This document shows positions 3,314 through 61,629 of a stretch of 64,000 bases of DNA, one piece after another; position 1 is the first letter of the stretch; every line of letters begins with the position of its first letter. Both the position numbers and the translations under genes were made by a program. The DNA comes from Guillardia theta CCMP2712. Its lineage: Eukaryota; Protista; Cryptophyta. The DNA lies in assembly GCF_000315625.1 (NCBI RefSeq), contig NW_005434596.1, forward strand, positions 172,360-236,359. The letters are read 5' to 3'. The notes under the pieces were generated by a model. The model was given only the letters and a program-made list of their open reading frames with translations. It did no database searches and was not told the DNA's origin.

Positions 3314-3345
<32 letters not shown>

Positions 3346-33103: not shown

Positions 33104-36100
33104 TCACTCCTGCTCCTCCTGCTCCTCCTGCTCCTCCTGCTCATGATTGTCATCATCGTCGATAGAAGGCCAGGGGTCCGATGGCGACGCGTCGCCCGTG
33201 AATCGGAGGATGCGGTCAGGAACGTAACGCGGCGCGTCATCTCGCTCGAAGGCCTGAGCAGCAGGGGTCAGGAGCTCCTGCAGGGCAACCCAGCCGCTCC
33301 TCACCTGGATGCCCCCTCCTGGACCCATATCGCTCATGGTGAAGGGAAGAGGGTTGTCAAACTTCATCTCCGCGAAGAATTTCCTGCTCGAGCTCGTCAG
33401 ACTTGGGGAAGGGAAAGGAACGAGAAATAGGAGGGCGGAGGTGGAGGGAGGAGGAAAAAGGAAGGTTCTGAGAGAAGACCATGACGGAAAAGGAGGAGAG
33501 AAGAGTAAGTGGCCGAGAAGGAGGTAGTAGAACGTCAGGATAGCATCTGACCTTCTCCATTTCTTCGGAAGGAACGACTCAATGTCAAGGCAGATGCTTG
33601 CCCTGCGCATGATATCTCAGCACCCGGCAAGCCTCCCTTTGTCTTCTCCCTACCTGTGCTTCATCGCAAACCCCTCCTTGTCCGAGGTCAACTTATCGTA
33701 GGTGATGGTGAGCTGAGCGATGAGGATGTTGAGCATGCCGACCGTGACGCAACTTGAAGAGATTTCAGCGACCGAAGAGCATGAAAGGATGCAACTCACG
33801 TGACGAAGGAAAGGAGGAGGAATCTGGTCAACGACGAGATGTCTGCGTACATTGGCTGAGCTACTCCAAGCACCTGAAGCCAAGTGAGGACGACATTGCG
33901 CGTGAGTGACGACAGATACAGCGCAGAGAGGTAGGGGATAGAGAGAAGGGTACGCTGACGTGGAGAGAGGATGCAGAGAAAAGGTGCAAGAGGCAGAGGA
34001 GGAGGAGGAGGAGGGGAGTACAGAGGATCAAAGTAGAGCTCACCTCTTGGAAGAGGATGACAGTCGTAGAGTCCCACCCCTCGTTGAACGGGCTGTCATG
34101 TAGGATGGAAAGAGCAGAGCCAAACGCTGCACATACGTCAGGTCAGGAGGCCTACACCCTCATATTGGGGAGGTGGAGCAGCAGGGGAGGAAAACAATCG
34201 TGTGTCACCAGCAATCAAGATGAGAATCATGATGAGCGAATGGCTCAAATCGTCAAGCATGATCCCGATGGTGTAGGTGAACGCTGCCATGGTCGTCGAC
34301 AGGATGCTGACCTGTGGGTGTCGACATTCAGTGAGACTCTCGGAGTGAGATGCAGCAGCAGAGGAGACAATGAGAAAGAGGAAAACGAGATAAGCATCAA
34401 CGAGCGATCTTCATCACCTGGAACATCTGCACCCACAACATGATGGAGACCACTGCCCATCCCGCTCGATCGCTCATGTCCTTCTGTGTGGACGATCCTC
34501 CGGTCGCGGAGGTAACTGCTCCGCCCGATTTCGCCGCAGCGAGAAGTCTCCGGAAGTGGGAGGAGACCCCGTCGTCTGCCACACTCGCTGCCAACCCAAG
34601 TCACCCAACATGTCCGGCTCATCCCCATTATGTTCAGCTCACCATGTGATCGACCACTCACGATGCAGGCTGTGACGTTTCCTGTGCTGGCGAGGCATTC
34701 TTCGTTGACACAAACCTTGAGGATCAATCAGAGGCCGACTGGTGGAGTGACGGGCGTCACCGGAACGTGAGTAGCGAAGATGAAGATGAGGAGGATGCAA
34801 GAAGTGATCCGAAGGAGGTTCCAGATACTTGCGATCGCCCTGTAAGAACACGAAGACTGTCAGAGCACAACAACCCTTCCCCACAACTTGGCACCTTGGG
34901 AAATGAATCGTGACAGATCCCATCTTGATGGGGATCATCAACCCCTTCCTGAGATGAGAGACCACCACCCACATCTGCCGGCAGCAAGTCAGATTCAAGT
35001 CCCATCCCCACAATCCGTTTACCTGCAGGACGAGCGTGCATACTGCCATGCTCATCAAAAGGTCTCTGACCCACTGAGCAACCACATGTCAAGACGAGCA
35101 AGTGCCACGGCAGCCATGCTTACTTGCAGCGAATCGTCGCAGGCGGAAGGGTCTTGCACGTGCCCGCACATGAATGCGACGAGCATGATCACGTACCAGA
35201 ACTCTTTCAAGCAAAAGATCTGCAGCCCGAACTTCTTCCATTTGAGATCCAACGTCTTGCACACTGCTGGGTGTCTGAACGTTTGATTGTCGCCTGCAAA
35301 GGACATGTAAGAGCACACGGAATCAATTGAAGCAACGGACCGAGGGCCACAAGGCGAGCCAACGGCGAAGTCCAGGGATCCTTAGACTTGTCAGGGTTGC
35401 CGTAGATGTCTTCGATGTAATAGTTGACACGGATCTTGATTGAATTCGGTCAGTCTGGCGTCGGCTTGCCAACACCATCGACCCTCACCTTGCGTCCCTG
35501 CATCTTCTCTTTCGAATGCCAGAGCAGACCATCCAGTAAAGTGGTCAGCAGACTGGGACTTTCTCGTCCCAGCTCGCCGAGGAGATCGTCATGGTACTTA
35601 AAAAGAACCTACGGCGATGGTTCAGGCATGATTCCTTGCTAAAATCCACATACATCTCTCCCGTAGTAGTATCCGTGAATGTCCGCACGAATTGTTAGGA
35701 GATCACTGCATTTGACATTCACTTCACAACATGAAAGAAAAATTTGTGATACCTGATGATAAACTCTGCAATGGCGTACTTGCCATCGTGCAATGCCCAA
35801 TACAGCGGAGAGATTACCGCGCCATTGATATCAATCTAGAGAACCAAAATCACCATCGTGTCAATACCCATCATGTGTGACTTCTCAAATCAACGTTCCA
35901 AGTTGATGACATTCATCGATAGAGACAATCAATATACCTGGCAGAGCCATTCCGATCGTAAATTTCGGGGAGCTGATGCAATTGCCTGCTGCAACGCGTC
36001 GACGTTTCCGCCGACAAGGGCATGCGTGATAGCATTTCCACCCATGTTCAATCCCTTAGAGATGCTGTTCGCAGCTCTTTTCCAGATCTGCGCAGAGGAA

Positions 36101-39100
36101 CAGTTCAGCATCGCATGCCCAATTTCTCGTTTGATTGCATGGATGAAAGTGATGTACTCGTGAAGGTGACAGCAAAGGTTGTCATGTGACTCACCGACAA
36201 CCAGGCGCTGTTTGCGCGGTCACTCCAAGTCTCTCCAAGGATCTGCAAAGGGCCCATGAGGAACACGAATGATCTCACAGCCCATCCAACCTCTTGCACA
36301 GTGCAGATGAGGGCGTTTCCGAACGGTCCGAGGTATTCCGATCGAACGCCGTAACGGATGTGACGAATGGTCAACTCGAAGAGCTGCTCGAAGAACCCCT
36401 GGAAGAGGCTTGAGATCGCAGCACAGCAGGGGAGGAAAGTACCTCGGGGTCAGATATACTCATCATAAGCATTGCCATGATGTGATGGATCAAATGGCCC
36501 CACCTGTGGCCACGAAGTCAGGAGGTGTATGTGTAAGCAGAAAATAGTTTTGTACATCTTGAGGGAGCGACGGAAGAGATGAGTTTGTTCCGGCGACTAT
36601 ATCAAAGTTCTGATTAGTTGAAGGAGACGACGAGAGCAAGGTGCTGCATACCAAATCGTTCAAGTGCTTCCAGAAGATCTTTCCAAGCTCCTGCAAATTT
36701 GAGTATCAGCACACAGCAATACAAAGTGGAGTATCTTCGTGAACCTCGACGTCAGTGCGCTGTTTCACAGTCTCCCAGCTGAGCATAACAACTTCGTTCC
36801 TCTTTGACTCGAAGCCAAGAAGTTCGCCAGAGAGTGCCTTGAAGGTAGAATTCAGCTATTCATCGCCATCAACCCATCCGGTTCAACCTTCGAGATCGAC
36901 CTCCAATACCATCGGAACGAATCATTGACGATATTGGTCCATCTGCCAACAACCAGTCATTCTTGTAGAACATCGACTTCATCCGCATTGCCTGTCCTTG
37001 CCCAAAGTCGCCTTCGCTGCATTCTCAAATGCCTCCCCGACAGTGGGGACGTGCGAGGCCCTCATGCCCCTGCCGATCTTGCTAAGTGGATTGCAAACGT
37101 CCTCTACGTCTTTACCATCTGTACAGCCGAGGAGCAAAGATGTAAACTTGTTCGATTTGCTGCTCAGGCTCCCAGACGAGTTTTGCCGCTGCCATGATAA
37201 ACCCTAAGATATTCTTGACAAGCTCTTCCTGATATGACACGAAAGTTTCAGAAATTAAGAAAACCTGCAGGATGGGAAATCAAAGTAGCTTTCGCACCAC
37301 AGCTTCTTCGTTGATAGCAATCCCAAGAATGGAGCGATTTTGTTTGCCCCCAGTCCCGTCTAGACGATGAAGAGTTACAATCCCAGACAGAATCATGAGC
37401 AAGGCAGCATCATTTGAATAGAGCAGCACTCACTTTGTCCATTCTCATTGCCTTGAGGTTTCTTCTGCGCACTGACATTGAGGAGATGTGAAACCTGAAT
37501 ACGTTTAAAACACGCAATGATGAAAAATTGCAAGACTTCTACCTCCGATGCATTGGCATTCCCGTACTTTGAGTTTCCCTTATCTTTTTTTGGCTTTTTC
37601 GTCTTGTCAGTGTCCATGATTCCTCCATTGATCTTCAACATGGACAGGGAGAGGAGCTCCTCGAAGATAGACGGGCAAGTAACCGACAACTCCGCACGTA
37701 AAATCTTGAGCAAGTTGTCCTGGTTGCCTGGCTCCTCTAGGAATTTAACGCTTTCCTCCATCACGCCAGCAAAGTTCTCGCCATCCTGTATGGCCTCCGA
37801 CATGCTCTCACAAACCATTGAGAAGACCACCCCCCAGGCTTTCTCGACTTCTGGGGTCCAGTCCGGTCCAGCGGCTTCAGAGAGCACACTCATGAAAACA
37901 GGCCCCATCAAGGGGATGTGGTGAGGCCTTACTCTATATTTTACGTGTCTGAGGCCCAAGCAAGAGACCTGCTGCTTCATGTTGTCGGGATCGTCGGCGA
38001 AGGAAACGAGCATACCGAGCATGTCACCCATCTTCACTGCCATGTAAACACGCGGTTGGGTGAAGAGAGATGCGACATTGGGTGCCAATCGGAACAGATG
38101 ATCATACACCATCTCACCAAGATCACTTGGCTCATAGTGCTCCATGATAATATCCCAGCAATCTCTAACAATGGAAAGAGTTGATCCAACATCCTTCAAC
38201 GATTGCTCCAAAGCCTCAGAGAGATAATTCCACATCCAAGACCATGCTCTTCGCTCTTCTGGCAGAAAATCATCTGCCAGAGCGGCCCTGAACACTCCAA
38301 GTACCACATCTTTCATCAAGGGCATCTGGCTACCCTTCACACCTTTACGATGGTGCATTGGGGCCAATTCAGCGATCTTCACATAGATGCTTGCTGGCGA
38401 TTGTACGTTCTCTACAATGCTCGAGAGCATGTCAACAAATTTGGTTCCCTGCACTGAACTGTTTGTGAAGCGAAAAAGAGGCTCCAACTCATCATTATCA
38501 CGGACAGAGGAATAAATGCTCGATCCGATTTCAGTGTAAGACATGCTCTTCAGAACTTTGTTCCAAGAGGCAACCACATGCCCAGAATGCTGAATCCATT
38601 TCCCCATGTCCACTGGAGGTGCTTTGCCAAACTTGACATTCACATTCCTTTTCCTGTGTCTACTTGGGCGGTAGACACCGCCTGCCTTGTTCAAGTTGGT
38701 TCCACGATAACGACTGTTGGAACGACTCATATCGCTCTGGCTGTAGTTGTCCTTGCTGTAGCTCGAGGCAGTGTTCTTCGATTTCACTGAGCGGCTCTCC
38801 CGCGAATGCATCGACCTTGGACTAGTATTCTGCATGCCCATGATTGCAAAAGAAGACGCAAAGGAGCCAGCAGTCCTAGTATCAGACTTGAACGAGTGGG
38901 TACTGTCGATCACAGGTTTGGGGTATACCCCCCCTCCGCCAAGTCCATTTTCATTCAAATGGTTCTTCTCACCTGCGTCAGAATCTGCAGCTTCTTCTTC
39001 TTTGCTCTCATGCAGTGCAGCAAGGGCCATGAATGGGCAGCCCCCACCACCCTGCTTCAGCATATCCTCGTCTACGCCATTCACGGTAGGGTGATGTTCA

Positions 39101-39492
39101 GGCAGCTTCAAAGGAGGAACAGGAAGAACATGCTTCTCGCTAGACACACGCTTCGCCCCATCATCATGAATTGCTGCAGATCCGTTCTCTGACATGCCCA
39201 CATCGGCTACAAACATGTCTACAAGTCGCCACTGAGCTTTCAAGCTGTGCGTACGCATGAAACTATCGGTTGCTTCCTTTCCGTTGCTGCTGCGAAGGAT
39301 ACCAGATCCACCAGGGTGCTCTCGAAGGAAGCTGGTGACGTCAAAGACCATATTGTGGATTATAAGAAGACATTTCGAGTCAGATGACTTCTCAGAAACT
39401 TGCTGTTTCGACCACACTGGGTTTCCCAGCGTCGTTCGCTTTCTGTCGATTGCAGTGAGTATGTCAGCATTTAGCGCCTTGCCTGCAGACAT
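33104..39492 (-). CDS. Cytochrome b5-globin(x4)-TRPV-like ion channel, paralog A
   Basis: b5 motif VFDVTSFLREHPGG...DSFMRTHS; globins with LAPMHHRKGV, LGLRHVKYRV and LTIRHIRYGV; pre-S1 HPAVCKTLDLKWKKFG; S6 VTVGMLNILIAQLTITYDKL; TRP-box-like KHRASICLDIESFLP. Exons are collinear with paralog B. Confidence 0.88.
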
Positions 39493-41989
39493 CTTGGCTG
39501 TTCCAGTCAAAAACCTTCCCGAGAAATGGGACGATCAGCCGAAAGCACGCCGCAAGCTTTGCAACGGTGAGCTTTGCCTCGTCCTCTTAGGGGTTTCAGG
39601 GGGAATAACACACTGACCAATGACAAAGTTGAGAGAACGGGAGCTTTCAAAGAAGAAGAGAGTTGTAGAATGAAGATCGAGCTTAATATCAAGACGAGAG
39701 GAGAATTCAAGTCTTATGATAGGGATTTGTACAGCACCGCTACCTCTACTTCACTCCACCATTGCAACCATGCAGGTCGTATACCCAAAGTCCGGTTACC
39801 GGGGGTCGTCGAAGGAGCGAGTGGGGGTGGGTGGTGGTTGGCGTGTTTGCCAGTAAATTCTTCTTCGCTGACTGGGTGGGGGTAGTATTCACTCATCGCG
39901 AACCGGTGCTTTGCACTTACAATACAGGGGTGTAAAAATATCAAGGTGCAAGAACCATCACCGGTAGTGTCCTAAATGCGAGTCATTGGTGGGTAGGGTT
40001 GAAATTGAGGAAACGGAGTCACCACAGGACTGTCGCCAAGAGGTGCGAAACAATGGGATCTAGTGGGGTGGGGTGGCAGGTCAGGGTGGTAGGGGTGGTA
40101 TGCACAATGAGGAGGCGGGACCACAGTAAAATATAAAACTTTTTTTAGTATTACAGGTACGGTTGTACGAAGATACCGTGGGATTGTGTTTTGAAAATTC
40201 TTTTAAAGAACCCCTTGGCTCCCAAAGGCCCCCCACCCTGCAGCCGATTTTAATGTGGTAGGGTGGGGTCCATGGGTCCACAACGTGACGACCTGCAGAG
40301 CTTTTTCAACCTGGGTGGGGTCTGCAGGTCTCCTAAGAGCATGACTAAGTAAAATGCCAGGACGGCTGAACAGACATAGTCAGGAAGGGCACTCTTGTCC
40401 TTTCCCCGAACCGATGCGTTAGCTTGTCCGTCCGTGAGATATTATTGTTTTTGGCAAGGATATCATGCGCCCCGCCACCCCTACCCTGCTCTTCAAGGTT
40501 CCGACAGTCACCTCTGGTGATACAGTGGTAAAATCTCCCGGAGGTGAATAAACTTCCGGGGTGGGATAGTGAGAACGGGGGGGTCCTATCAGCGGGGGTC
40601 ATTGTGAGTAACTGTACATCGGGGGAGGGGGAGAGGGGAGGGCAGGGGGTTGAGACTGGGTGGCCTCCGGGCGTCCCTGGCCCTCGGGAATGACGAAGGG
40701 AATTCTCCTGCACCCCTATTTGGACGGGTGGGTGGTGGGGTCGTAACAAGAGTGTTACTTTTCGAACCAAAAAAGGAATATCCCAAAAGAGAACCTTTCG
40801 AGAAATTTGGGAAGCCGGGGACGGATGGGTGGTGTCAGCTTCTTGTCACATCTCGGTATCTCCAGATGGACCCATGTGACGTGTGGTACCCCACCCTTGC
40901 CGAAACCCCATGATACATGGGGTGCGGCGTATCTTTTAAAATGTTTCTAATCTTAAAAGATACTTTACGACTGCCTCCTTGCAAGGGACCCGAATCCTTC
41001 CTGTTCTGTTTGTGCTTACCCCGAAGTTTTGTCAAGTACCCACCCCACTAGAGACCATTCCTTCCTGACCCCCACCCACCTTTATGGTAAAACTTACCCG
41101 TGTTCCTACCATTGCGTCCCACCTACCCATATGTGTACCTGGCCACCCGGGGCGATACAACCCTGTCCCTATCACCCACCAACGGCCTCCTCATATTCGG
41201 TACACAGTACCCCTACCCCCCTGCTCCCAAAGAATGTACACTCATGGACCACCCACCACCTGGCAAAACAGCGGTCTTAATCATCCACTATGGCGAGAGA
41301 AGATTATGAGAAGATTATGAGAAGGGTTATGCGCAGGGAAAAAGAGGACAGGACAGGACACAAGCTCATGGAGTAGACGGAAATGGGCTTACCTGCTGAT
41401 GATGTTGATGACGCAGAACGAGGAGGGCTCTTGAGAGTAATGCAGGGGGAGAAGCTGGACGTCCTAAGTGAAAATGGACTAATATGATTACTGGTGTTAT
41501 CAGGAAAGGATAATGGCACGACCCTCAAGTGGTAGATCAACACGCAGTTGATACTCTGTTGTGTTTGCTTGTGCAAGCAATATGAATGCAAGCACAAGAT
41601 AAGGAGGAATTCAGAATGGACGTGGCGGTAGTAGAACTCGAAACAGTGAATCATGAAAGGCTTCAAGAAAGGCTTCGGTGTGTTTCTCTGTCTTTCATCA
41701 GTTTTCCAACATGTCGAGGTCATAAGTTGTAGGAAAGCTAGAGCATTGGCCATATTAGACCATGGAGGAAAATAGATAGACGTGGCAGACCTTACTAGTG
41801 TTACTAGTCTCATGTTTTTGTTGCGAAATAATGCTCACACTGTGTCGCCAACCTGCTAATCGTTACTGCCAGGAGATGAGCAGCAAGTGAATCGGTTTGC
41901 ATCTCGGAGGATCTTGTTATAAGCTTTGATCTGTGTTTCTTTACCGTGGAGCTCAGACAGTGTGGTAGTATCCCGAGCCATCAGTCAGG

Positions 41990-44900
41990 ATGGACTTTCA
42001 CGCCATGAGACTCCCTGAAGATGTTTTGGAGAAGATCCAGGATGAGCGAGACAGGCTCGGCCATCCTGTGCTCACAGATGCTGATCTCGTTGAAGCACGA
42101 TCCGAAGGGAAGATGTTGATCATCATTGCCGGGATGGTCTTCGACGTGACCAAGTTCCTCGAGGAACACCCAGGGGGCTTCGAGGCGCTCGAGCGCCACA
42201 TTGGAAGAGATGCCTCTGATCCTTTCTTCGAGCGCCATGACAACCCTGCTTTCCAGCTGTTGCCGAGGTATTACTATGCCGACTATGCTGCTGATGATGG
42301 TACGGCTGCGTTTGGCGAGCTGCCAATCCTGAGGGAGGAGAGCGGCGAGACCTCGATGAACGAAGACGAGGCCACTGCAGATGCTGAGCTCAAGGCACGC
42401 ACTGATGAATCCCATGAGGATCATCATGAAGATCAGGACGATGAACGCGCTGGTTCGGGTTACAAGGAAGATCTGCCCGAGGGCGTAACTGAAACTGCGG
42501 GTGCCGCAGGCCCTTCGCAGGAGGGAGTAGTACCTGCCATGGTTTTGGATGCAAAAGAGAATGGTGTGCTGGAAAATGGATCTTCAGAGGAAGCGCATTC
42601 GGAGGTAGATTCAAAGCCTGATGAGGAGGAGAAAAGGAAAAATTCCAAGGATGATGACAAGCACAGTGTAGCTACAACAGAGTGCAACCAGCCGCCGACT
42701 CTGAACATTCCTGCAACAGGATGTCCTTTTATGGCTCTAGCGATGCTCAAAGAAGCAGGCCACGAACCCGTCACACCTAGCAAGACCATGTCGAGAACGG
42801 GAAGCTTCAAAATGAGATCAGGCTCAGACGACATGACTTCGAATAATCCGTATGGCTCTTTCAGTTCTTTTCCGAACAAAGCGACTGAGTCACCGAGATC
42901 GGTCAGATCTCGAGAAGATCTCTCTTCCTCGAGGCCCACCACAACTAAGAACAGCAGCAGCATGAACTCAAGGTCTCGCAAGGGCAGGGGAACTAACATC
43001 AACAAGGCTGGAGGTGTGTTCCGTGGACAAATGCACCGCAAACGGCGTCTCGCCAAGCTGAAGAAGGCTCCTCCTATCGATCAGTACCTATGGGACCTGC
43101 ACTCTGCTCGTATTGCATCAAGTTGGACCGAGTTGGTGAAGAAGTCGGATTACGCAGAGATCGGACGTCGCATTTATGGCTCAGTGAAGGCGAACGACAC
43201 TTTGGAACCTCTCTTTCGCTTCACAAACCAAACTGTGCAAGGCACAAAATTCGTTGATATGCTCTCCAGCATCGTTGAGAACATCAACAACCCGCAGACT
43301 ATCTTTGAAAAAGTGAACGAGCTGGCCCCGATGCATCACAGGAAAGGTGTGAAGGCAGCGCACATGCCAATAATGAAGGGCATTATTGTTTCGTTGCTGA
43401 AGCATGTGCTCGGAGACGAATTCACCAACGAGGATGAAGAAGCTTGGAATTGGATATGGCAGTATCTCACACAGATTCTCGATCAGTCCTTGCAGGATGT
43501 TGGCTCCAACTTGGGTCTCGTAAGAGAATGCTGGGACTCAATTTGTGAACAGTACACGACAAATGAACTTGGTGAGATGGTGTACGACCATTTGTTCAAG
43601 ATGGCTCCAAACCTGACAATGTTGTTCACGAAACCAAGATCGTACATGGCTGTGAAGATGGGCGACATGTTGTCCATGCTCGTGTCCTTCGCCGACAGCT
43701 CTGAATCGATGAAGCAGCAGATTTCATGGCTGGGTTTGCGCCACGTCAAGTACAAGATCAGACCCCATCACATCCCGCTGATGGGACCGGTCTTCCTTGC
43801 TGTTGTGGCAGAAGCAGCTGGTGTGCACTGGTCGCAAGACACAGAGAAGGCGTGGTCTGTCCTCTTCAATATGGTTTGTGTCAACATGGCAGATGCGATA
43901 CAGGAGGGGGAGGAGTATGCAGAGGCTCTAGAGAAGGCGATCGGAATCTTGAAGGAGCAGGTGGACGCGACCAGCATGGTGGCAACGATCAGAGCAGAGC
44001 TGGCGACCAACTGCCCTTCCATGTTCGACGACGAGGCGAGCTCTGGGTCCAAGGGGTTGTCGAGGCTGAAACGTAGCGGACGGCTCATGTCGGTCTCATC
44101 CGGCAACCCAAGCAATGAGTCGGTCAAGTCAGGCTCGGATAGGAGGGGAAGCGTTCCCGATCTTGCGTTGCATGATGTGAGTATCTTGCAGTGTAGTGCG
44201 CTGTACTGAAAGAGATGTCAAAAGGTTTCGCATCTCCTTCATGCCAGTGCTGCGAAAAAGAAAGAGCCAGAAAGTGAGACGATTGCTCTGAGTGATTTGT
44301 AGCTTGTTTGATGATGAGAACTCCAGGGAAGCTGAGTACAACCGGAACGTCCCGACCGAATGCGAACACTTTTGAAGGGATGGCGGAGGAAACGACCGTG
44401 AACATCATCGAGAGCGTGTACGACTTCTTCCTGGAGACCGGACAGAATGTTTGGGACCCTGAGAAGCAGATGGAAATTGTTGCGATCTGTGCTCCTCGCC
44501 TGTTTGCATGGTTGATCCTGAACTCCAAGTGGAGCGGAAAGTTGACCTGGACCATGGCAGGGGCATGAGGGAGAAGCATCTGAAAGATGTATGGTTGGCG
44601 ATCGAGCGAGCAATCACCAAGACTGCGGAGAGCCTGTAACAATGTCGTGCTCTCGCCTCACTGGTTCTGAACTGTTTGTCAGGTTCGATGAGAGGATGAT
44701 AAGCTCCCTTCGCTGGTTCTGGAAAAGCATCTCCGAGGTGACCTTTCCCCAGTTGTGCCTCCGAGCTCTGCAATTCTTTGCCATGGCTCGCGTTGCCGAT
44801 TAATGCTGCCAGCTAATAGAGATTGTGCTGTCCTCTGTCTCCAGTGTTGGCAACTGTGCTCCATGTTATTTCCTTGTACGTGGTCCTGGATCTGAGATCT

Positions 44901-47900
44901 CCTTCACCTACCCAGGCATTGCAAGAAGAGTTCAACGCCTCTGAGAACGGCTACAACGACCTGGTCTTGAGCAGCTGGGATATTGTCAGACAGAGAACGG
45001 AAGTGCAGGAGCTTGGGGAGAAGTTCTGGAAGTATCTCAACTGCATGGTTGCCCTCATGACTTGTCTCCCCTCCGTGTGATCCCTGCTTGCAGAGCCCTG
45101 AGCAGACGAACCTGTTCCGCCGATCGCTGAGCATGTGGGGCCATCTGCTTCACCATATCGTGAACATGCTGCTCATCAGCATTACAGACCCCGAGGTACA
45201 GCCCTCCTCCAGCTTGCATCCTACTCCTCTCTCCATTCTCCTTCTGCCATTGCTGCCCTGGTCTTCTTCCTTTCTTCTCCTCCTCTCCCTTCAGCGTCCA
45301 TAGATTTTCATGAAGGAGTATAGATCCTTCTCCATTTCCTCTACCTTCTGCCACCTGCTGCAAGCTTATGTTGTCATTTCAGGAGTATTATGACCTCATG
45401 TTTGAGCTCACTATCCGCCACATCCGCTATGGAGTTCGCTCCGAATATTTGAATCCTTTCGGAAACGCCTTGTTCGCAACCTTCGAAGAGGTTCTTTCCC
45501 GCCTCTTTGATCTACTTCCTCTCCTTTACGCTCTCTCTCCCTCGATGCTTCTTCTCGAACCTTTCTTCATCCTTGCCTTTGACCCTTCCCTTCCCTTCCC
45601 TTGCATCTTCTTCTGAACCCGACGAAATCAGATTCTTTCCGATGTCTGGGAAGAGAAGACGACGAAGGCGTGGAAGCTGGTGAGCTGACGAACAAACAAG
45701 GCACTCCGAGTGACATGATGATGAAGGTTTGGAAGAGAGCCACATGCAACATGTCAAGAGGGCTGAACATGGGAGGCAACGCGATCACGCAAGCTCTAGT
45801 AGAAGGGAACGTGGAGGCGCTACAGGACGCCATCAGCTCGGCTCCCCGCAGCAAGAGAGCAGAGTGGTTATGTCAGGTGATGACGAGGGAGATTTATTTC
45901 TTGGTGGTGGTGGTGAGGCGCATGAACGCTGCGACATAATGATGAAAGAGGCGATGATGGATGGGATGGTGTTGTGGATTCACTATCAGACCTGTTCTGT
46001 TCATGTCTGACTCTCTTGTCTCCCCTGCTGTAGATTGATATCAACGGCGCCATCATCTCCCCCTTGATCTGGGCGATGCACGATGGAAAGACAGCGATCG
46101 TAGACTTCATCTTAAGGTGGTGTCTTTTTCTGTACCCCTGCCAATGTTTTGATTGGTCTCCGTTACAGCGACCTGCTCACTATCCGAGCGGACATCCATG
46201 GATACTACTACGGGAGGGAGGAGCTCTTCAAGTACCACGATGATCTGATTGGAGAGATCTTGCGGGAGGCTCCTGACTCGATGACCGTCCTCCTGGACGG
46301 GCTCATGTGGCACTCCAAGGAGAAGCTGATGGGACGATTGGTAGGAAGATTTCCTTGCGCAGGAGGATGGGAGGCGTTGGGGTGATAGGGGCGTTGGATC
46401 ATATGTCCTTTCGGATCCTACTGCTCGAATATCACCTTGGTTGCTGTTGCAGCTTTGTGAAGATGATGATGATGATGATGATGAACATAGAGAGGTGATG
46501 ATCACGACGATCGTTGACCGAAATGCAGGTGAGAGTGAACTACTATATCAAAGACGTGTACGGTGAACCTAGAGAAAACGTCGACTCCTGGGCTTCACCT
46601 CTAGGACGTTTCATCGTGCTGGGTGAAGAGAACCTTCTGATTGTCTTCCATTCTCCCTGATTAACTGCTCATTGTAGGCGATAACCACACGTTCCTGCAT
46701 CCGATTGTCAAACAGACTCTGCAGCTCAAGTGGCAGAAGTTTGGTCTGTTCCTCTTCTGCTTGAAGGAGGTCTGGTACCTCGGCATGCTCATCACGTTCA
46801 TGGTTGGCCATGTGCAAGACCCGAGCGGGTGCATAGGAAGGCTGCAAGTGAGATCGTTTGTTTGAGATGCTGTTGCCATGTAGAGGACTTGTTGACCTTA
46901 GTGGCTGGATGCGCTTCTCCTCTTTGTGTGTTGAGGCTCGATGTGCGAAGTGTGCGAGTTGTTGGATGAGAGGACGTCTGTACTGTTGTCGCAACGACCT
47001 TGTTGCTGTCATGGCCCCATCATCCCTTCATTTGACTTTGAACCGTCTGCAGAAAGATCGTATTGCCCTCTCCGTCATGGCAGTTGTCACTCTGGGCGTT
47101 CAGGTGAGCCGCAACTTGCAGTGCTTGTCAAACTTTTTCTCAGCTCCTTTCGTGGCAGATGAAAATGGTCATGACGCACTTTGTCAAGCGGCTGTGCATC
47201 ACGTATCAGATCGGCTCCTTCGAGATTATAGTCCCTCGTTGTCTGGCGAGCATCTGGACGCTTGTCAGGATCACTTCCTGTGTTCTCCTTATCTACGTCA
47301 TGTCACGCGATGTAAGATGCATCTCTTCTTTCTCTGCTCTTCTCTTCCTGCCCTTCTACCTCTTCTATCTCCAACTTCTACTCTCCCCTTTCTCCTCCTA
47401 CGAATAGTCCTTGTTCTCTCCTGGCGTCCTCCTGCTCTTTGACATTCTTTTCAATTCATTTCCATCGCATGATCATTGCTCTCCAGGGATGCAATCACTG
47501 CGTGAACAACCCGACGTCTGCTTCCTGCACCAACATCACCAACACCTCTACCCGAGCAGGTGCTGTTGGTGCAGTCGCACATTTGTGCATAACTCTGCCT
47601 TTTAACTCCTCCTCTCAGAGTACTGGGATGAACCTGCGGACAACTTCGGCATGTTGGAGCAGTTCAGCCTCCTTGCAGCCAAGGCCAAGGGCGACACAGG
47701 AGTAGCGACGGCCACTACACTGGCTTCATCCAAGGATCGATCCGCCATGGCGTTTGTTGGTGTTCTCCTGTGGATTCAGATGTTCCAGGTCTGTTCCTAC
47801 TGCAGGGGAGGGAGTGAGGGGGAAGAAAGCTCTAAACTTTCTTGCAGGCTTGCATTCTGTCAACACCTCTCGCTGCTTTTACCTATACCATTGGCATCAT

Positions 47901-48750
47901 GTTTCTTGATATTAGCCATTCTTTGTTCATGATCTTCATCCTCATCTCAGGTTCCTCCTTCTCCTCCTCCTCCTTTGCTGCCCTTGTGCTGATTGCTTCT
48001 TTAGCGTTCGGCTCTGCCCTGACAATGATCGGCGAGCCTCCTTTCGATCAGGGTTGGGATCATACGCTGGCTGTGCTGCTCCAGGAGGTAAGTTGATGCA
48101 AGAAGAGGAGGAGAAGAAGAGGGCAAGTGATGAGACCTGGGCCAGGTTCTTGGCGTATCCCAGCAGTACTATCCAGAGATTGGCTCCTTCACTCGCTTCC
48201 TCCTTCTTGTCTACGTCTCGTGAGCGCCTCACTTGCCTTCTACGCTCCAAGTGACCTGGCTTACAGTGCTGTCACTATCGGCATGCTCAACATCCTCATC
48301 GCTCAGCTCACCATCACCTACGACAAGTTGTCGTCGGAGAAGGAGGGGTACGCGATGAAGCACAGGTAAGAGACGAGGACGTAGGGTGGAGCGATCCTCA
48401 ACTCGCTGACAGAGCAAGCGTCTGCCTCGACATTGAGGGCTTCCTCCCCTACTTCGTGCGGAAGTATGCTTGAACAGCTTTCGCTGCTTCCTCCTTGCTG
48501 ACGACTTCACCCTCCAGGAGGATCTTCGATGACATTGGCTTTGATGAGCCCCTCAACTTCAGTGCCAACGACTCGGGGCCGGCAGGAGGCGTTCAGGTAC
48601 GAACCACCTGCTGTAGAGTAGCCTCGGAGCCTGACGCTCTTCCCCCTCTAGCTCTTCGAGCGAGACGACCATCCCAAGTACGTTCCCGACCGCATCCTTC
48701 GCTTCACCGGCGATGCCTCCCCTGAGGATCCATGGCCCGAGATCAACTGA
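41990..48750 (+). CDS. Cytochrome b5-globin(x4)-TRPV-like ion channel, paralog B
   Basis: b5 motif VFDVTKFLEEHPGG...DPFFERH; globins with LAPMHHRKGV, LGLRHVKYKI and LTIRHIRYGV; pre-S1 HPIVKQTLQLKWQKFG; hydrophobic helices; S6 VTIGMLNILIAQLTITYDKL; KHRASVCLDIEGFLP. Stop at 48748-48750. Confidence 0.88.
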
Positions 48751-50442
48751 TTTGGCTAACCACCATGTGACTGTGTGTAAATTATGTTGTCAGTTCTTAA
48801 TAAAATTCCGACTGAGGATGACACTCGGCTGACTCAGTGACCTCACGGTCGGAGTCATCTGGCGGTCTGCGCGGCGCGCGGCAGCCTGAGCGCGGCGCGG
48901 CCCGATCACTGTAAACTAACTATGATGTCTGCCTGCCTGTATGTATAGTACGGTACCGTACCGTTGTAGTACGGGATCGGATGGTACTACCGTACCGGGT
49001 ATGTATCACTGAGCCATGCCAGTCAGCGGATAGCGCCGGGTACTGAGAGCCTCGGAGCCTGCGAAGACTCAGAGGAGACCTTCCTAGCCGTCTTGCTAAG
49101 GTCTTCTCATGTCTGGATGCTTGGGTTTCACATCCTATTAGCATACACAGTGACAGTCGGGGCTATCTCACACGCGGCCTGGCAGTGTACTGACTCCGTC
49201 CTAAATTCTGGTTTCGGCCGAAGTTCAAGCCGGAGCAAAAGCTGTCTTGTTGCAACTGAGATCGACTCATTATGTCTGCGTGCCACCGTGACTTTGCCCC
49301 CCGGCGCGCCCGCAGTGCGGCGGCGGCCACGGGACGGCGGCCGCGGGGCGCCGGCGGCGCCGCGGGCGGAGTCAGCCTACGAGTAGTACCGGCCGGGCGG
49401 CCCGGGCCGGCCTGGCATGTCAACTTATGCGGCAATGACTGAGGCGGCCCGGCCCGCGCATCACTGTCAATAGTAGCGTTGCGGCTTTCAAGTTTTCAGG
49501 CCCTCAGAGGGCCGGCCGTTTTGCCGGCCCGGATCATCATGGCTGAGTCCGGCTCGGACTCAGTGGGAACCGTTGAACGGTTCCGATGGCTTGTGACCGT
49601 GGCTCGGTTATGAGTCCTCTGTTTAGAATCTCAGCAGGTGCAGGGTAGGGTAATAGAAGGAGTAGGTGGAGGGTACTAATAGTATCTTGAGGTTATGGGG
49701 TGGTGAGATTATGACGGGTGTCAGTTGAGTGAGAGGGGTTCCCGATAATTTTTAATTCATATTTGTGGGTTGTGGTAAAATTAATTGATTAATTTTCAAA
49801 CTTTGATTGAAATGTCTACCTCTTGCAAAGTTGACACGGTGGTTAAACCAACTGGTGGGTACTCTGGACCAGGTAGGCTCAAAGTAGGGGTACAGATGAT
49901 GCTCCAATAGGGTTGTGTGAGTTTTCAAGGGGTAGGGGTAGGGGGGTCAGCTATGTGGTAGATGACTGGAGATGCTTCCATAATAGTACGGGTAGGGATC
50001 CATAATAACCGGTCCTTTCACATTCAGTCGGATTTTCTATGGTAGGTCATGAGTCACTAGGGGTTAGATTACTATTTTCAGTGGGTACTTAACTCAACCA
50101 AGACTTTTTTGGTGGGGTGGGGTGTATATACAGTGCTGAAGATGTGGTCTTTATCAATGAATGTTGGTACATAATACAGGGTATGGGTGCATGTTGTAGG
50201 GGTACATTGACAAAAGCAAAATGTAGGGGTGATTTAAGGTATTGGTATCTACAAGGAGGGTCAGGTCAATTCTGAAATTTCATCTTTAGGGGTAGGGGTC
50301 CTAATCCTCCCGCAACAAACCCGGGGAGTGAAGTAGGAACTCGGGTAATACGAAATGTTTCAACTAGTGAGACAACACTGTGAAAATACATCGTAATATT
50401 TGAAATTTCAATTCAAAATGGAACCTGGGTCCTTTTGGGGGA

Positions 50443-52700
50443 ATGTGGGGAATTCGATCGCCATGGCTACAGGAAGAGGCGGAGCGAAGTGAAGGAGCGA
50501 GCACGTGAGAGAGACAGGAAGAGCAGAGGAGGAGAGAGACTTCGAGGATAAGGAGAGAGAGAGGAGGCGGAAGACAAGGGGCAGAGGGATTGAAGAGGTT
50601 GAGAGGCGAGAGGTGGAGGTACCCTGGTCAAGGAACTATTATTGCAATCCAAGTGCAGGGTTTCAGGGTACGGAAGGATCTGGAGTGAACGTTGGATAGT
50701 GCACTGCTTGGTTCTTGAGAGCAGGAACACCTTTCAAGAGTGCTGTACTGAACCATGGTAGCGATCACGAGCGAGCAGCCAGAGCATGCGGCTCATCAAC
50801 AGGCTATAAGCCAACGTGCCTGCCCTGGTTGGCTGCAGGACATTGCAGCGCTGAACCGACTGAACCATGGGGAGCGAGCAGCTGCAGGCGATACAGTGGA
50901 ACACCTTCTCTCGCAGCTCAGAAACAACAATGTGCATATCCGCCTAGCTGCGATCAGGTCCCTAGGGCACGTTGCGAGGAATGGGGACTTCCACGTTGTG
51001 AGAGAGCTGTTGGGCCAGTCGATAGCAAGCAGCGGGTTCGGTGTGCAGGATAAGGCCAGCGAAGTCCGTGCTCTGGCTGCGGAGGCTGTGGGGAAGATAG
51101 CGGCAGACACGGGGGATCGTTTGGTTTGCGACAAGATGCTGGATATGATTGATGACAAAGATTGGGCAGTGAGGAGCTCGGCGCTCAAGGTAGCAAACTT
51201 TCATTCTGCTCGTGCTATCCTGATGCTTGTTCTGTGTGGACAGTCCTTGTCGAAAGTCTGCAGCCGTGCAGATGATTGGGTGGTGGATGAGCTGTTGGCG
51301 AAGATGATGGGGAGCGAGAGCTGGTCAGCAAAAGCACTCTGTGCGGAGGTGGGACCTCAGTAGTCTGTGGTGGCCTCAGGCAAGCGTCTGATCACTGTGC
51401 TCGATGCAGGGCCTGGGAAACCTGTGCACTAGAGGGGCAGGACATGTTGTAAATGCGCTGATAGAGATGTCCCGGCACGATGACTGGGCTGTACGGAAGG
51501 TTAGGATTCAAACCAACTACTTTTGCAAGCATTGGAATGACTTGCTCTCTCCTTGAAGGCATGTCTGATAGCCTTGGGGAAGATTGCCCAGCAGGGGGAT
51601 CAGCTAGTCTTGCGGGTGCGTGGCTATTAGAGTTTGCATGAAGGAAGAGAACTGAAAATCTCTCAGGCGATCGTACAGTCCTCGCAGGACGCGGACTGGA
51701 GGGTCAGGAAGGCTGCCGTGCAAGCTCTGGGCCAGGTAAAGGCTCTTGCTCTCGTGGTCTTGTGGTCACATGATCGTACAGGTTGCTGAGAGAGGATGCC
51801 GGTTCTCGATCAACGGTTGAAGTCATGATCTAAGTGAAAATTGGATGTTGACTAGCGTTGGCAGAGATCCTCTTGCGACTGGACGATACTGCAGTGGGAG
51901 AAAGACACTCCAAATTGGACGTGATCAACCATGATGACAGGGACGTCAAGCTTGCAGCGGTGTGCAGTTGGTCCTGCCACGCTCTTCTCTGACTTGAAGT
52001 TTTAGATAAAGGTGCTCGAGAAGCTTGCGGAACCGGGAGATCATCATGTTCTAGCTGCTCTTGACAGCACAGCTCAACGTAAGATTTCTGCAATCCTCCT
52101 CGTCCACTTGCCTTTAAGTTCGTTCCATCCAGGCATCGCTGGAGATTCCGTGCTGCTTGCTGCGATAGTGCGGGCTACGACTGTCATCTCGCACGAGAGG
52201 TCAGTCTTCATGCTGCTCCCTTTGTGCAACCATCTCTTATTGCAACCCCTGTATCCGCCATTGGTGTATTCTATTCTATCTTCTTGCTTTCTTGTAGCCA
52301 CTCGGCGTTCACAATGCTCTCGTCTGACGGTTCTGCTCCTTGCAGCCTGATCCCGCGGTTGGGAGATTTCTCCGGCACGGAGTCCTCCTCCTCTACAGAT
52401 TCCTCACCGGAATGGTGAGCAAGAGCCAGCGGTGGAGGCGAGTCTGATGACAGCAATGTTTCAGTGTGAGCAGGGGAAGCCTGGCTGAATAAGGATGTTC
52501 CTAGCAGACGTTTACCTCCATGTCGGAGTCAACACGATCAAGGGAAATAGAAGGGAGGAGGGAGGTTGGAAGAAAGGAAAGGAAGGAACGTTAACTCCTC
52601 GGCAGAGGAGAACGCTTAAAAGAACTCGATGCCTGGACGAGGGACCTTGAACCTACCTCGGAGTAGGTGCGCGATGGGTTTCTCGAACGCCTTTCTCGCA
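50443..52700 (+). CDS. HEAT-repeat (PBS lyase/HEAT_2-like) protein; both ends uncertain
   Basis: Repeats NNVHIRLAAIRSLGHV, DKASEVRALAAEAVGKI, DKDWAVRSSALK, DDWAVRKACLIALGKI, DADWRVRKAAVQALGQ and DRDVKLAA. Confidence 0.75.
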
Positions 52701-52798
52701 GCGAACAGATTTATTCTCCCGTGATAATATTATGTAGATTGAATGTTTAGCTAGTCTTGTTTCTCACTCTTGCCAGATGAGCTTCTTCTTCAGTTGTA

Positions 52799-55748: not shown

Positions 55749-56338
55749 GGCCCAGCTCAAAAGGCTTCTGAATTTCCGCGAGGAAGGATAGCAGATGTCG
55801 TGCTAGTCCCTTTTTAAGATAGGAAACTCCTAACTTCGGCAGAGCCAGTCGATGCAGATGCCTACAAGGATCTAACGTCAAGGTGGGCCAAGTGATCTGG
55901 TTTCACATACAAATGCAGTCAACAGCACAGCGAAACCAGATCATGAAATCAGCCATGCTATGATGACGCGGCGGAGGCTGTTGAATCATTGACGTGTGCA
56001 AGGCAATTCAACGGATGCATCTTCGTGTTTATCACACTACTTTTGACATCATACTTAGTAAAACATACGATCCGATTGACTCCTCATGCCAGTGAACTTA
56101 CTAAAGTTAGGCCTTGTCGGTGAACTGCCCGGTCAATGATGAGTCACGCGGCCCGTAGCCCCTCCGGCCCTTCCCCGACACGGCACGTCCGATCCCAGGC
56201 CCGGGTACGTCGCAGCGGGTAACGGGCGCCGGGCCGGGCGGCGTGACGGTCCCGGATCCAAGGCTCAGTGCCGGGTATGAGTGATACATTTCACTGTATG
56301 CTTATATTACCCGCAATCGGGGGAATAAAAAGGGGGCC

Positions 56339-58798
<2,460 letters not shown>

Positions 58799-61529: not shown

Positions 61530-61629
61530 NNNNNNNNNNNNNNNNNNNNNNNNNNNNNNNNNNNNNNNNNNNNNNNNNNNNNNNNNNNNNNNNNNNNNNN
61601 NNNNNNNNNNNNNNNNNNNNNNNNNNNNN
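61530..61629. other. Assembly gap (100 N)
   Basis: Run of N. Confidence 1.

What the first reader, a model, noticed from the sequence alone, without database searches (positions are those of the whole stretch)
33104..48750. Two diverged globin-TRP paralogs arranged head-to-head: candidate heteromeric channel
Seen: paralog A (minus, ATG 39492) and paralog B (plus, ATG 41990) diverge from a ~2.5 kb spacer. They share domain order and many intron positions (after APRLxxW, DPE, WLCQ, W[IV]QMFQ, KHR, GG[IV]Q), while linkers and introns have diverged. Both frames look intact, so this is an old, retained duplication, and the second copy independently supports the fusion. Established: invertebrate TRPV pairs (Drosophila Nanchung/Inactive, C. 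elegans OSM-9/OCR-2) act as heteromers. Inference: these are co-regulated subunits of one channel.
Basis: partly seen in the sequence, partly recalled or inferred. Interest (0 to 1): 0.75.

Follow-up and report, generated by a model that had tools for sequence, protein, structure and literature searches.

The report
Head-to-head pair of haem-sensor TRP channels
Two intact, back-to-back genes of the alga Guillardia theta each join a cytochrome b5 and several haemoglobin-like domains to a TRPV-like ion channel. They are two of at least eight such genes in this genome, and nothing yet shows that these two in particular work together as one channel.

Summary
The window is Guillardia theta CCMP2712.

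- **Gene A:** minus strand, 39492 to 33104, 30 exons, about 1489 aa.
- **Gene B:** plus strand, 41990 to 48750, 25 exons, 1547 aa.
- **Arrangement:** they diverge from a 2,497-bp spacer and are 55% identical.
- **Architecture:** both encode cytochrome b5, globins and a TRPV-like six-helix channel.
- **Introns:** all 24 introns of B sit at intron positions of A.
- **Integrity:** both frames are open and both are under strong purifying selection. dN/dS against the Hanusia phi orthologues is 0.04 for A and 0.06 for B.
- **Expression:** a G. theta transcript matches B exactly. Both orthologues are transcribed in Hanusia.

The reading as a dedicated heteromer is not supported.

- A and B are two of at least eight paralogues, and six of the eight have one-to-one Hanusia orthologues.
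- A and B are not resolved as sisters.
- The shared introns are ancestral to the whole family. B has simply lost five.
- The spacer is too long for a classic bidirectional promoter.
- I found no full-length G. theta transcript for A.

Three things leave the idea open. A second, independent head-to-head pair lies on a Hemiselmis-like metagenome contig. A CACCC-like motif clusters upstream of seven of the eight paralogues. The pore-lining S6 exon evolves in concert across the family.

The scan had already found this gene family at four other places in this genome. I found no paper describing the channel part.

The parts
33104..39492 (-). Gene A: 30 exons, CDS 4470 nt, about 1489 aa (cyt b5, globins, TRPV-like channel)
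   Evidence: Spliced alignment to the Hanusia orthologue P0053 and to P0010/P0012. No internal stop. dN/dS 0.040. The ends of exons 21 and 22 are uncertain by 6-15 nt: 34761 or 34767, and 34643 or 34658.
37543..39492 (-). A exon 1: cytochrome b5 (aa 29-94), low-complexity linker, globin D1 and D2
   Evidence: Pfam Cyt-b5 E 2e-15 and Globin E 1e-19. HPGG motif and the F8 His contexts (MHHRKGV, LRHVKY) seen. The GenBank fragment P0052 (54 aa) maps to 39259-39420.
35938..37494 (-). A exons 2-13: linker, degenerate globin-like stretch, globin D3 (F8 His in IRHIRYGV)
   Evidence: Exon table and exon peptides. The profile matches bacterial single-domain globins at E 1e-13 over the homologous part.
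35341..35835 (-). A exons 14-17: ankyrin-like repeat and TRPV-type linker/pre-S1 domain
   Evidence: Weak Ank_3 hit, E 0.065. AF2 model elements mapped to the homologous B exons. 74-78% identity between A and B.
33654..35293 (-). A exons 18-27: S1-S6, pore helix, filter (QEVLGVAQP), S6 and start of the TRP helix
   Evidence: Exon peptides. PDB profile match to TRPV3 S4-TRP helix, E 2.6e-9. Foldseek TRPV hits.
33104..33602 (-). A exons 28-30: end of the TRP helix, C-terminal beta strands, acidic tail, stop
39493..41989 (.). Divergent spacer, single-copy in the genome, with 11 CACCC-like sites (39824-41070). G-rich strand up in the A-proximal half, C-rich strand up in the B-proximal half.
   Evidence: Only a self match in the genome. 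GGGTGGGGT occurs 7 times in the window against 0.5 expected, 4 of them here. Site counts. No Rfam match. No extended homology between the two halves.
41990..48750 (+). Gene B (GUITHDRAFT_143733 / EKX39126.1): 25 exons, 1547 aa. Transcript spans at least 41881-48820.
   Evidence: G. theta transcript L020 / protein P0054 matches every exon at 98-100% identity. dN/dS 0.058 against Hanusia L001.
41990..44176 (+). B exon 1: cytochrome b5 (aa 31-98), acidic linker, globin D1 and D2
   Evidence: Pfam Cyt-b5 E 2.6e-15 and Globin E 1.7e-21.
44225..45876 (+). B exons 2-10: linker, degenerate globin-like stretch, globin D3. Three of the five lost introns lie here.
   Evidence: Exon lengths: B3 about A3+A4, B6 = A7+A8, B7 = A9+A10.
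46034..48365 (+). B exons 11-22: ankyrin-like repeat, linker, S1-S6, pore (QEVLGVSQQ), S6
   Evidence: AF2 model of the Hanusia B orthologue, pLDDT 84.7, mapped to exons. Foldseek.
48267..48463 (+). B exons 22-23 (S6 and TRP helix). Missing from the GenBank model EKX39126.1 but present in the transcripts.
   Evidence: P0011 skips them. L020 and P0012 include them.
48413..48750 (+). B exons 23-25: end of the TRP helix, C-terminal beta strands, stop

Best explanation
A and B are two functional members of a family of at least eight Guillardia theta genes. Each encodes one polypeptide: cytochrome b5, three haem-type globins (plus a degenerate globin-like stretch), one ankyrin-like repeat with a TRPV-type linker, a six-helix TRPV-like pore domain with a TRP helix, and a C-terminal beta strand.

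The head-to-head arrangement is the product of an old local inverted duplication of the gene alone. It predates the Guillardia-Hanusia split. B has since evolved faster and lost five introns.

The rest is inference. The subunits form tetramers, as TRP channels do. Ligand or redox state of the haems (O2, NO, CO or electron supply through cytochrome b5) is passed through the linker to the S6 gate. The eight paralogues share one almost invariant pore but differ in sensor linkers and in the S1-S4 periphery, so they most likely provide differently tuned or differently placed versions of one channel.

Co-assembly of paralogues, A with B included, is possible. The data do not indicate it.
For: - **Organism and genes:** P0011 (GUITHDRAFT_143733) and transcript L020 match B.
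- **Eight loci:**. Six of them have 1:1 Hanusia orthologues, and the Guillardia/Hanusia family is monophyletic at 97/98 support.
- **Intact frames and canonical splice sites:**
- **Purifying selection on both:**
- **Transcripts:** L020 (B, G. theta), L019 and L001 (the A and B orthologues, from the same Hanusia sample), L002 (paralogue C78c).
- **Domains:** Pfam Cyt-b5 and Globin. Three separate globin matches and a TRPV3 match at E 2.6e-9 in the PDB profile search. Precomputed YVC1_C hits. AF2 model with pLDDT 84.7, whose first 47 Foldseek hits are all TRPV1/3/4/5/6 at E down to 2e-11.
- **Ancestral intron pattern, B-specific losses:**
- **Pore and S6 nearly invariant across paralogues:**
- **Duplication of the gene alone:** no paralogy between the flanks.
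Against: - No functional datum exists. Haem binding, gating and stoichiometry are all inferred.
- A second head-to-head pair in another cryptophyte lineage hints that the orientation may not be an accident.
- A shared upstream motif hints that the family may be co-regulated.
- No G. theta transcript of A was found, so its expression in this species is inferred from selection and from Hanusia.
- dS is near saturation, so the dN/dS values are approximate.
Confidence: 0.72

Rival explanations
1. A and B are the two co-regulated subunits of one obligate heteromeric channel, expressed from a shared divergent promoter, like Nanchung/Inactive or OSM-9/OCR-4.
For: - TRPV subunits form heteromers with defined stoichiometry (PMC5064019).
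- The arrangement is divergent, with 11 CACCC-like sites in the spacer.
- Both orthologues were assembled full-length from the same Hanusia sample.
- Pore and S6 are nearly identical, so a mixed tetramer would be structurally plausible.
- An independent head-to-head pair, 55% identical with a 2.4-kb spacer, lies on contig L041.
Against: - There are eight paralogues and the other six are unpaired.
- The A+B sister grouping is unsupported.
- The motif clusters also lie upstream of five of the six other paralogues, so they are not specific to the pair.
- The spacer is about 2.1-2.4 kb between transcript starts.
- B and C78c transcripts were recovered from G. theta, but not A.
- Nan/iav and the osm-9/ocr genes are, to my knowledge, not neighbours in their genomes, so adjacency is not a mark of heteromers.
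Confidence: 0.12
2. The head-to-head pair is an ancient, selectively kept unit that predates the split of the Guillardia and Hemiselmis lineages. The species-wise clustering of paralogues in trees would then be an artefact of concerted evolution.
For: - Two head-to-head pairs, with similar spacers (2.5 and 2.4 kb) and similar identity (55%), in two cryptophyte lineages.
- A and B are the two basal branches of the Guillardia family, outside a clade of the other six at 80/82 support.
- Gene conversion does act in this family. The S6 core is identical in five G. theta paralogues while the Hanusia orthologues differ at synonymous sites.
Against: - The Guillardia/Hanusia family is monophyletic at 97/98 and far from the Hemiselmis-type pair, at about 30% identity.
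- Synonymous sites between A and B are saturated everywhere except the S6 exon, so any homogenisation stopped long ago or was confined to short tracts.
- The intron-less relative on L009/L010 has no partner within 3.5 kb upstream.
Confidence: 0.1
3. One of the two copies is silent or on its way to becoming a pseudogene.
For: - No G. theta protein or transcript of A of 535-1703 aa is in the protein collection.
- GenBank holds only a 54-aa fragment model at A.
- B evolves 1.6 times faster than A at non-synonymous sites and has lost introns.
Against: - Both frames are open over 30 and 25 exons with canonical splice sites.
- dN/dS is 0.04 and 0.06.
- B has an exact transcript.
- The A orthologue is transcribed full-length in Hanusia.
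Confidence: 0.03

Closest known systems
Animal TRPV channels (TRPV1-6; Nanchung/Inactive; OSM-9/OCR)
   Same: - Best sequence-profile match in the PDB: TRPV3 residues 548-714, S4 to the TRP helix, E 2.6e-9.
- Best fold match over more than 500 columns, TMq 0.53-0.56.
- The model has a linker beta-sheet, pre-S1, S1-S6, pore helix, TRP helix and C-terminal beta strand.
- TRPV subunits form homo- and heterotetramers (PMC5064019).
   Different: - There is no six-repeat ankyrin domain. One ankyrin-like repeat follows a cytochrome b5 and globin array of about 900 residues.
- The position of the TRP-box tryptophan reads A (AMKHR).
- The filter reads LGVAQP / LGVSQQ.
- There is a long Cys- and NxT-rich S3-S4 loop.
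- Only 12-17% sequence identity to the TRPV chains.
Yeast vacuolar TRP channel TRPY1/YVC1 (Pfam PF23317 YVC1_C)
   Same: Precomputed Pfam hits of family members to YVC1_C.
   Different: The hits are marked weak for the A orthologue P0053 and for B's own product P0054. My own Pfam runs did not return YVC1_C even at E 1-10. TRPY1 has no haem domains.
Bacterial globin-coupled sensors (HemAT, globin-diguanylate cyclases, globin-histidine kinases)
   Same: A sensor globin placed N-terminal of a signalling output domain in one polypeptide. This is established knowledge; see also PMC8076648.
   Different: The output here is an ion channel. The globins are 3/3 myoglobin-fold, neuroglobin-like and single-domain-globin-like, not the sensor-globin lineage. 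There are several in series, plus a cytochrome b5.
Chimeric cytochrome b5-globin proteins of G. theta (Smith, Vinogradov and Hoogewijs 2014, PMC4101818)
   Same: EKX39126.1 (1497 aa) is gene B and EKX33177.1 (1060 aa) is paralogue C189. The paper reports an N-terminal cytochrome b5 and three globin domains in each.
   Different: - The paper never mentions a channel or a membrane part.
- It counts two chimeric proteins where the genome holds at least eight.
- Gene A is not among them.
- By accession order, its 126-aa single-domain globin EKX39124.1 may be a fragment of A. This is inference and was not tested.
Neighbouring TRPV paralogues of mammals that co-assemble (TRPV5/TRPV6; TRPV1/TRPV3)
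   Same: Products of local duplication that lie next to each other and are reported to form heterotetramers. This is my own knowledge; Hoenderop et al. 2003 is in the reference list of PMC5064019.
   Different: To my knowledge those pairs lie in tandem, not head-to-head, and each member also works as a homomer. Adjacency there is a trace of duplication, not a requirement for assembly.

Membership tests
TRP channel superfamily | Six transmembrane helices with a re-entrant pore helix between S5 and S6 | tested here: met
   AF2 model of the B orthologue (pLDDT 84.7) has helices 137-174, 182-211, 234-252, 311-335, 337-374 and 407-439, with a pore helix at 383-395. 437 PDB matches with E <= 0.001, led by TRP channels.
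TRP channel superfamily | TRP helix directly after S6, with the TRP box | tested here: inconclusive
   The helix is present (model 443-459) and the profile alignment to TRPV3 runs through residue 714. The sequence reads FAMKHR / YAMKHR. The tryptophan I recall from the TRP box consensus is absent. That consensus is from memory.
TRP channel superfamily | Curated Pfam channel model above its gathering score | tested here: not met
   PKD_channel scores 19.5 bits (cut-off 22.4) for the A orthologue, and there is no channel hit for B. The relative P0013 passes at 23.0 bits. Exon-wise scans gave nothing.
TRPV subfamily | N-terminal domain of six ankyrin repeats | tested here: not met
   Only one weak Ank_3 hit, E 0.065. 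The N-terminal 900 residues are cytochrome b5 and globins.
TRPV subfamily | Closest relatives by sequence and fold are TRPV channels | tested here: met
   TRPV3, TRPV1 and TRPV4 are the best PDB sequence matches. Foldseek ranks 1-47 are all TRPV, and TRPA1 first appears at rank 48.
Globin (haem-binding 3/3 fold) | Pfam Globin above its cut-off, and a proximal His F8 | tested here: met
   Globin scores 71.7 and 77.3 bits (cut-off 22) with 2-3 stretches. The His contexts MHHRKGV, LRHVKY and IRHIRYGV are conserved in A and B. Haem binding itself was not tested.
Cytochrome b5 | Pfam Cyt-b5 above its cut-off, and the HPGG motif with a second His | tested here: met
   57.0 and 56.6 bits (cut-off 23.7). 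EHPGG and a downstream His are present in both genes.
Obligate heteromeric TRPV pair (Nan/Iav type) | Physical co-assembly and mutual dependence of the two subunits | not testable with these tools
   Needs co-expression, co-IP, subunit counting and electrophysiology.
Obligate heteromeric TRPV pair (Nan/Iav type) | Co-expression of the two genes | tested here: inconclusive
   Both orthologues are full-length in Hanusia sample 3300017027. In G. theta sample 3300017164, B and C78c were found but no A product of 535-1703 aa.
Bidirectional-promoter gene pair | Divergent transcription starts less than about 1 kb apart | tested here: not met
   A's ATG is at 39492. B's transcript reaches up to 41881. 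The gap is 2.39 kb minus A's unknown 5' UTR, which is 292 nt in the Hanusia orthologue.

The most novel reading that the evidence does not exclude
A and B co-assemble into a heterotetrameric, haem-gated TRP channel whose two subunit types carry differently tuned sensor arrays. They are co-regulated from the CACCC-rich divergent spacer. The head-to-head unit is selectively kept in cryptophytes, as the independent pair on a Hemiselmis-like contig suggests.
Probability: 0.12. Interest if true: 0.85.

Novelty: new variant of a known kind. Interest (0 to 1): 0.6.

Why it matters
A TRP-type channel with its own cytochrome b5 and globin chain would be a direct, one-protein link between oxygen, nitric oxide or redox state and membrane excitability. 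I found no description of it. The only paper on these proteins treats them as chimeric globins and does not mention the membrane part.

The pair studied here gives two natural, diverged, intact versions side by side, with exact exon maps and a transcript for B. That makes them ready for expression alone and together.

The work also corrects the public annotation. The GenBank model of B lacks the S6 and TRP-helix exons. A exists there only as a fragment. The genome's count of two chimeric globins should be at least eight.

If the paralogues do co-assemble, the family would be a combinatorial gas or redox sensor in a unicellular alga.

Tried and rejected
- **Exon-by-exon Pfam scans of the channel part:** nothing usable. 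The channel was identified through natural transcripts, a PDB profile search and a fold search instead.
- **Greedy exon-mapping script:** failed in the divergent linker. I replaced it with a dynamic-programming spliced aligner and validated that on an mRNA/genome pair.
- **P0009 as the A orthologue:** rejected for the C-terminal third. From about residue 1067 it matches paralogue C189 at 89-96% and A at only 40-83%, so it is a chimeric assembly. P0053/L019 is the true full-length orthologue.
- **Metagenome-contig scan:** returned no Guillardia or Hanusia transcripts.
- **Spacer as a transposon with terminal inverted repeats:** rejected. It is single-copy, and the inverted repeats are only copies of the short G-rich motif.
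- **RNA gene in the spacer:** no Rfam match.
- **Segmental inverted duplication that included the flanks:** no paralogy between 1-33100 and 48751-64000.
- **A/B-specific gene conversion in the S6 exon:** pS there is 0.20 against about 0.75 elsewhere. I rejected it as pair-specific because the same 41 nt are identical in five paralogues and the flanking introns are unrelated.
- **Joined models:** I gave no joined (spliced) model of A or B to any search, family or fold tool. I used exon references, B's natural transcript product (L020/P0054) and the Hanusia orthologues' natural transcripts (L019/P0053 for A; L001 for the fold of the B-type channel part). Frame continuity was checked inside scripts by carrying the phase from exon to exon, without saving or sending a joined protein.
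- **Large representative search and ESM Atlas:** not used. They were not needed.
Full report
**What is there**

The window is nuclear DNA of the cryptophyte alga Guillardia theta CCMP2712. The GenBank protein GUITHDRAFT_143733 (P0011, EKX39126.1) matches the plus-strand gene at 94-100% per exon. A G. theta transcript, L020 from JGI sample 3300017164, matches it at 98-100% in 25 blocks. The window is contig C78:172360-236359 of an 87-Mb assembly.

The two long first exons start at 39492 (minus) and 41990 (plus). They are 50% identical over 486 residues, E 2e-165. Both carry Cyt-b5 and Globin above Pfam's cut-offs. About twenty further exon pairs match downstream, in the same order.

**Exon models**

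No search tool here takes a spliced model, so I wrote a protein-to-genome aligner with splice-site and phase states. I checked it on paralogue C78c, for which a G. theta mRNA (L002) and the genomic locus (L005) are both at hand. It reproduced all 30 mRNA-defined exons to the base.

| | Gene A | Gene B |
|---|---|---|
| Strand and span | minus, 39492-33104 | plus, 41990-48750 |
| Exons | 30 | 25 |
| Protein | about 1489 aa | 1547 aa |
| Reference used | Hanusia orthologue P0053 | P0054, the product of transcript L020 (same length) |

All introns are GT-AG apart from one GC donor in A. Neither gene has an in-frame stop before the terminal one. The ends of A's exons 21 and 22 are uncertain by 6-15 nt.

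I gave no joined model to any search, fold or family tool. Searches used exon references or natural transcripts.

**Intron positions**

All 24 introns of B coincide in position and phase with introns of A, and the homologous exons mostly have identical lengths: 108, 48, 150, 83, 94, 170, 51, 170, 103, 83, 74, 99, 51 and 79 nt.

A has five more introns. Those five are also present in C78c, C178a, C178b, C29 and C192. The roughly 30-exon pattern is therefore ancestral to the whole family, and B alone has lost five introns. Shared intron positions say that A and B belong to one family. They do not say that A and B are a special pair.

**What the proteins are**

A profile built from four family members was searched against the PDB. 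It finds:
- three separate globin domains: neuroglobin-like at profile positions 368-495 and 507-634, and bacterial single-domain-globin-like at 971-1100, E 1e-13;
- TRPV3 residues 548-714 (S4 to the TRP helix) at E 2.6e-9.

A single sequence already finds TRPV3, TRPV1 and TRPV4 at about E 3e-4.

I made an AlphaFold2 model of the channel half of the Hanusia B orthologue (L001:3204-4781, with a 25-row alignment). It has mean pLDDT 84.7 and pTM 0.79. Its first 47 Foldseek hits in the PDB are all TRPV1, 3, 4, 5 or 6, at E down to 2e-11 and TMq 0.53-0.56 over more than 500 columns. TRPA1 first appears at rank 48.

The model shows one ankyrin-like repeat, a linker beta-sheet, pre-S1, S1-S6 with a pore helix, a TRP helix and C-terminal beta strands. 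I mapped these elements to the exons of B.

The protein is not a TRPV by the subfamily's own definition, because the six-repeat ankyrin domain is replaced by the haem-domain array. No curated Pfam channel model reaches its cut-off for A or B. It works like a TRPV core with a new sensor head.

**The pair in its family**

A six-frame search of the genome finds eight loci with the cytochrome b5-globin first exon, each followed by channel exons:
- A, B and C78c on contig C78, with C78c 92 kb downstream of B;
- C178a and C178b, on the same strand and 25 kb apart;
- C189, which is GUITHDRAFT_120658 and is truncated by assembly gaps;
- C29;
- C192.

Only A and B are head-to-head.

In a maximum-likelihood tree of the D1-D2 region, six of the eight have one-to-one Hanusia phi orthologues with full support. 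The A+B grouping has 51/0 support, so it is unresolved. With more outgroups, the Guillardia/Hanusia family is monophyletic (97/98). A and B are basal branches beside a clade of the other six (80/82).

The flanks of A and B share no paralogous genes, and the two halves of the spacer share no extended similarity. The duplication unit was the gene itself.

**Are both copies alive?**

| | A vs Hanusia L019 | B vs Hanusia L001 |
|---|---|---|
| Codons compared | 1466 | 1410 |
| Amino-acid identity | 91% | 87% |
| dN | 0.050 | 0.081 |
| dS | 1.24 | 1.38 |
| dN/dS | 0.040 | 0.058 |

These figures are. dS is close to saturation, so the ratios are rough, but the constraint is unmistakable in every region of both genes.

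B is transcribed in G. theta (L020). The A and B orthologues were both assembled full-length from the same Hanusia sample.

For A in G. theta I found no protein of 535-1703 aa in the collection, only a 54-aa GenBank fragment of its cytochrome b5. That is weak negative evidence about its expression level in that one sample, and nothing more.

**Evidence bearing on co-regulation and co-assembly**

Against a dedicated pair:
- There are eight paralogues.
- The A+B sister relation is unresolved.
- The distance from A's ATG to the start of B's transcript is 2.39 kb, well beyond a classic bidirectional promoter.

For some shared control:
- The spacer is single-copy and holds 11 CACCC-like sites. GGGTGGGGT occurs 7 times in the window against 0.5 expected, 4 of them in the spacer.
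- I treated the spacer as the discovery set and the 3-4 kb upstream of the six other paralogues as the test set. Five of the six carry a cluster of at least four sites within 1 kb. Only 7.8% of 3-kb windows in 200 kb of control DNA do (P = 1.6e-5).
- The paralogues' gene bodies hold almost none.
- The motif is therefore a family-wide upstream feature, not a mark of the pair. The control is random DNA rather than promoters, so the enrichment may be overstated.

The pore is almost the same in all eight paralogues. The filter reads QEVLGVAQP in six, GVSQQ in B and IVGISSP in C29, and S6 is nearly invariant.

Synonymous sites between A and B are saturated in every exon except the S6 exon, where pS is 0.20. 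However, the same 41-nt core is identical in A, B, C178a, C178b and C189, while both Hanusia orthologues differ from it at synonymous sites. The flanking introns are unrelated. This looks like short-tract, family-wide concerted evolution of the gate-lining segment. A uniform pore is compatible with mixed tetramers, but equally with eight homomers.

**A second head-to-head pair**

ENA contig k141_208772 (L041, 14 kb) carries two family members in divergent orientation:
- one at 1735-5574 on the minus strand;
- one at 7950-11432 on the plus strand, continuing in three more exons to about 12533;
- a 2,375-bp spacer between them;
- 55% identity between the two.

In the tree, one is sister to a Hemiselmis andersenii protein (P0018) and the other to P0024. 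Together they form a clade far from the Guillardia family. The same arrangement therefore arose, or was kept, in a second cryptophyte lineage.

With only two cases, and with gene conversion known in the family, I cannot tell recurrence from conservation. An intron-less relative (P0013 on L009/L010) has no partner within 3.5 kb upstream.

**Literature**

Smith, Vinogradov and Hoogewijs 2014 (PMC4101818) list EKX39126.1 (gene B) and EKX33177.1 (C189) as chimeric proteins with a cytochrome b5 and three globins. They do not mention a channel or a membrane part. Four further full-text searches for globin-TRP fusions found nothing.

Nan-Iav and OSM-9/OCR-4 (2:2) form heteromeric channels. For OSM-9/OCR-2, co-assembly is inferred from mutual localisation and was never reconstituted.

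Earlier follow-ups of this scan reached the same reading of the family (cytochrome b5 and globins fused to a TRPV-like channel) at four other loci of this genome. My tests of that reading were made independently here.

**Verdict**

The gene family is an undescribed variant of known kinds: a globin-coupled sensor with a TRP channel as its output. The pair itself is an old inverted duplicate within an eight-member family, with both copies functional.

The heteromer idea is neither supported nor excluded, and I put it at about 12%.

Shown here:
- gene structures;
- integrity and selection;
- transcription of B;
- family size;
- the TRPV-like fold;
- the family-wide motif;
- concerted evolution of the S6 exon.

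Inferred:
- haem binding;
- tetramer formation;
- gas or redox gating;
- any statement about subunit composition.

Noticed in passing
window 48267-48463: The GenBank model of gene B (EKX39126.1, 1497 aa) skips exons 22 and 23 (150 nt in frame), which encode S6 and the TRP helix. The G. theta transcript L020 and the Hanusia transcript include them, giving 1547 aa.
   Followed up: yes
window 39259-39420: Gene A has no full-length public model. GenBank holds a 54-aa fragment (P0052) of its cytochrome b5. By accession order, the 126-aa single-domain globin EKX39124.1 of PMC4101818 may be another fragment of A, and EKX39152.1 a fragment of paralogue C78c.
   Followed up: partly
window 39824-41070; L013, L015-L018: Clusters of a CACCC-like motif (CCCCACCC / GGGTGGGG) lie 0.2-2 kb upstream of seven of the eight paralogues. 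They are rare in the gene bodies and occur in 7.8% of control 3-kb windows (P = 1.6e-5 for 5 of 6 independent regions). The motif is absent from the Hemiselmis-like contig L041.
   Followed up: partly
window 33654-33752 and 48267-48365; homologous exon in L003, L004, L006: The S6 exon evolves in concert. A 41-nt core is identical in five G. theta paralogues (C178b and C189 are identical over 96 nt, on different contigs). The Hanusia orthologues of A and B differ from it, and agree with each other, at synonymous sites.
   Followed up: partly
L041:1735-12533: A second head-to-head pair of globin-channel paralogues lies on a marine metagenome contig from a Hemiselmis-like cryptophyte. They are 55% identical with a 2,375-bp spacer. 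The genes have long intron-free stretches and neither has a Pfam cytochrome b5 hit.
   Followed up: partly
L009:3523-8397 and L010:3563-8437: P0013 (1625 aa: partial cytochrome b5, globins, and a channel part that passes Pfam PKD_channel) is one uninterrupted ORF on marine metagenome contigs. So a relative of this 30-exon gene exists without any intron. Its organism is unknown.
   Followed up: no
P0009 (MMETSP Transcript_2496): This 'complete' Hanusia transcript product is a chimera. Residues 1 to about 1066 are the orthologue of A, and the rest is the orthologue of paralogue C189. P0003 from the same species lacks the stretch homologous to A's exons 5-9 (306 nt in frame), which may be alternative splicing or an assembly artefact.
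   Followed up: partly
window 34643-34715 and 47487-47559: The loop between S3 and S4 is rich in Cys and NxT sites and is the most variable part of the channel among the paralogues. It has low pLDDT in the model. It looks like an extracellular, glycosylated, fast-evolving surface.
   Followed up: no
L006 (G000:C189:57000-66999): Paralogue C189 (GUITHDRAFT_120658, 1060 aa) is cut short by two assembly gaps (N runs at locus 99-915 and 3975-4979), not by biology. Its channel exons lie beyond the gap.
   Followed up: yes
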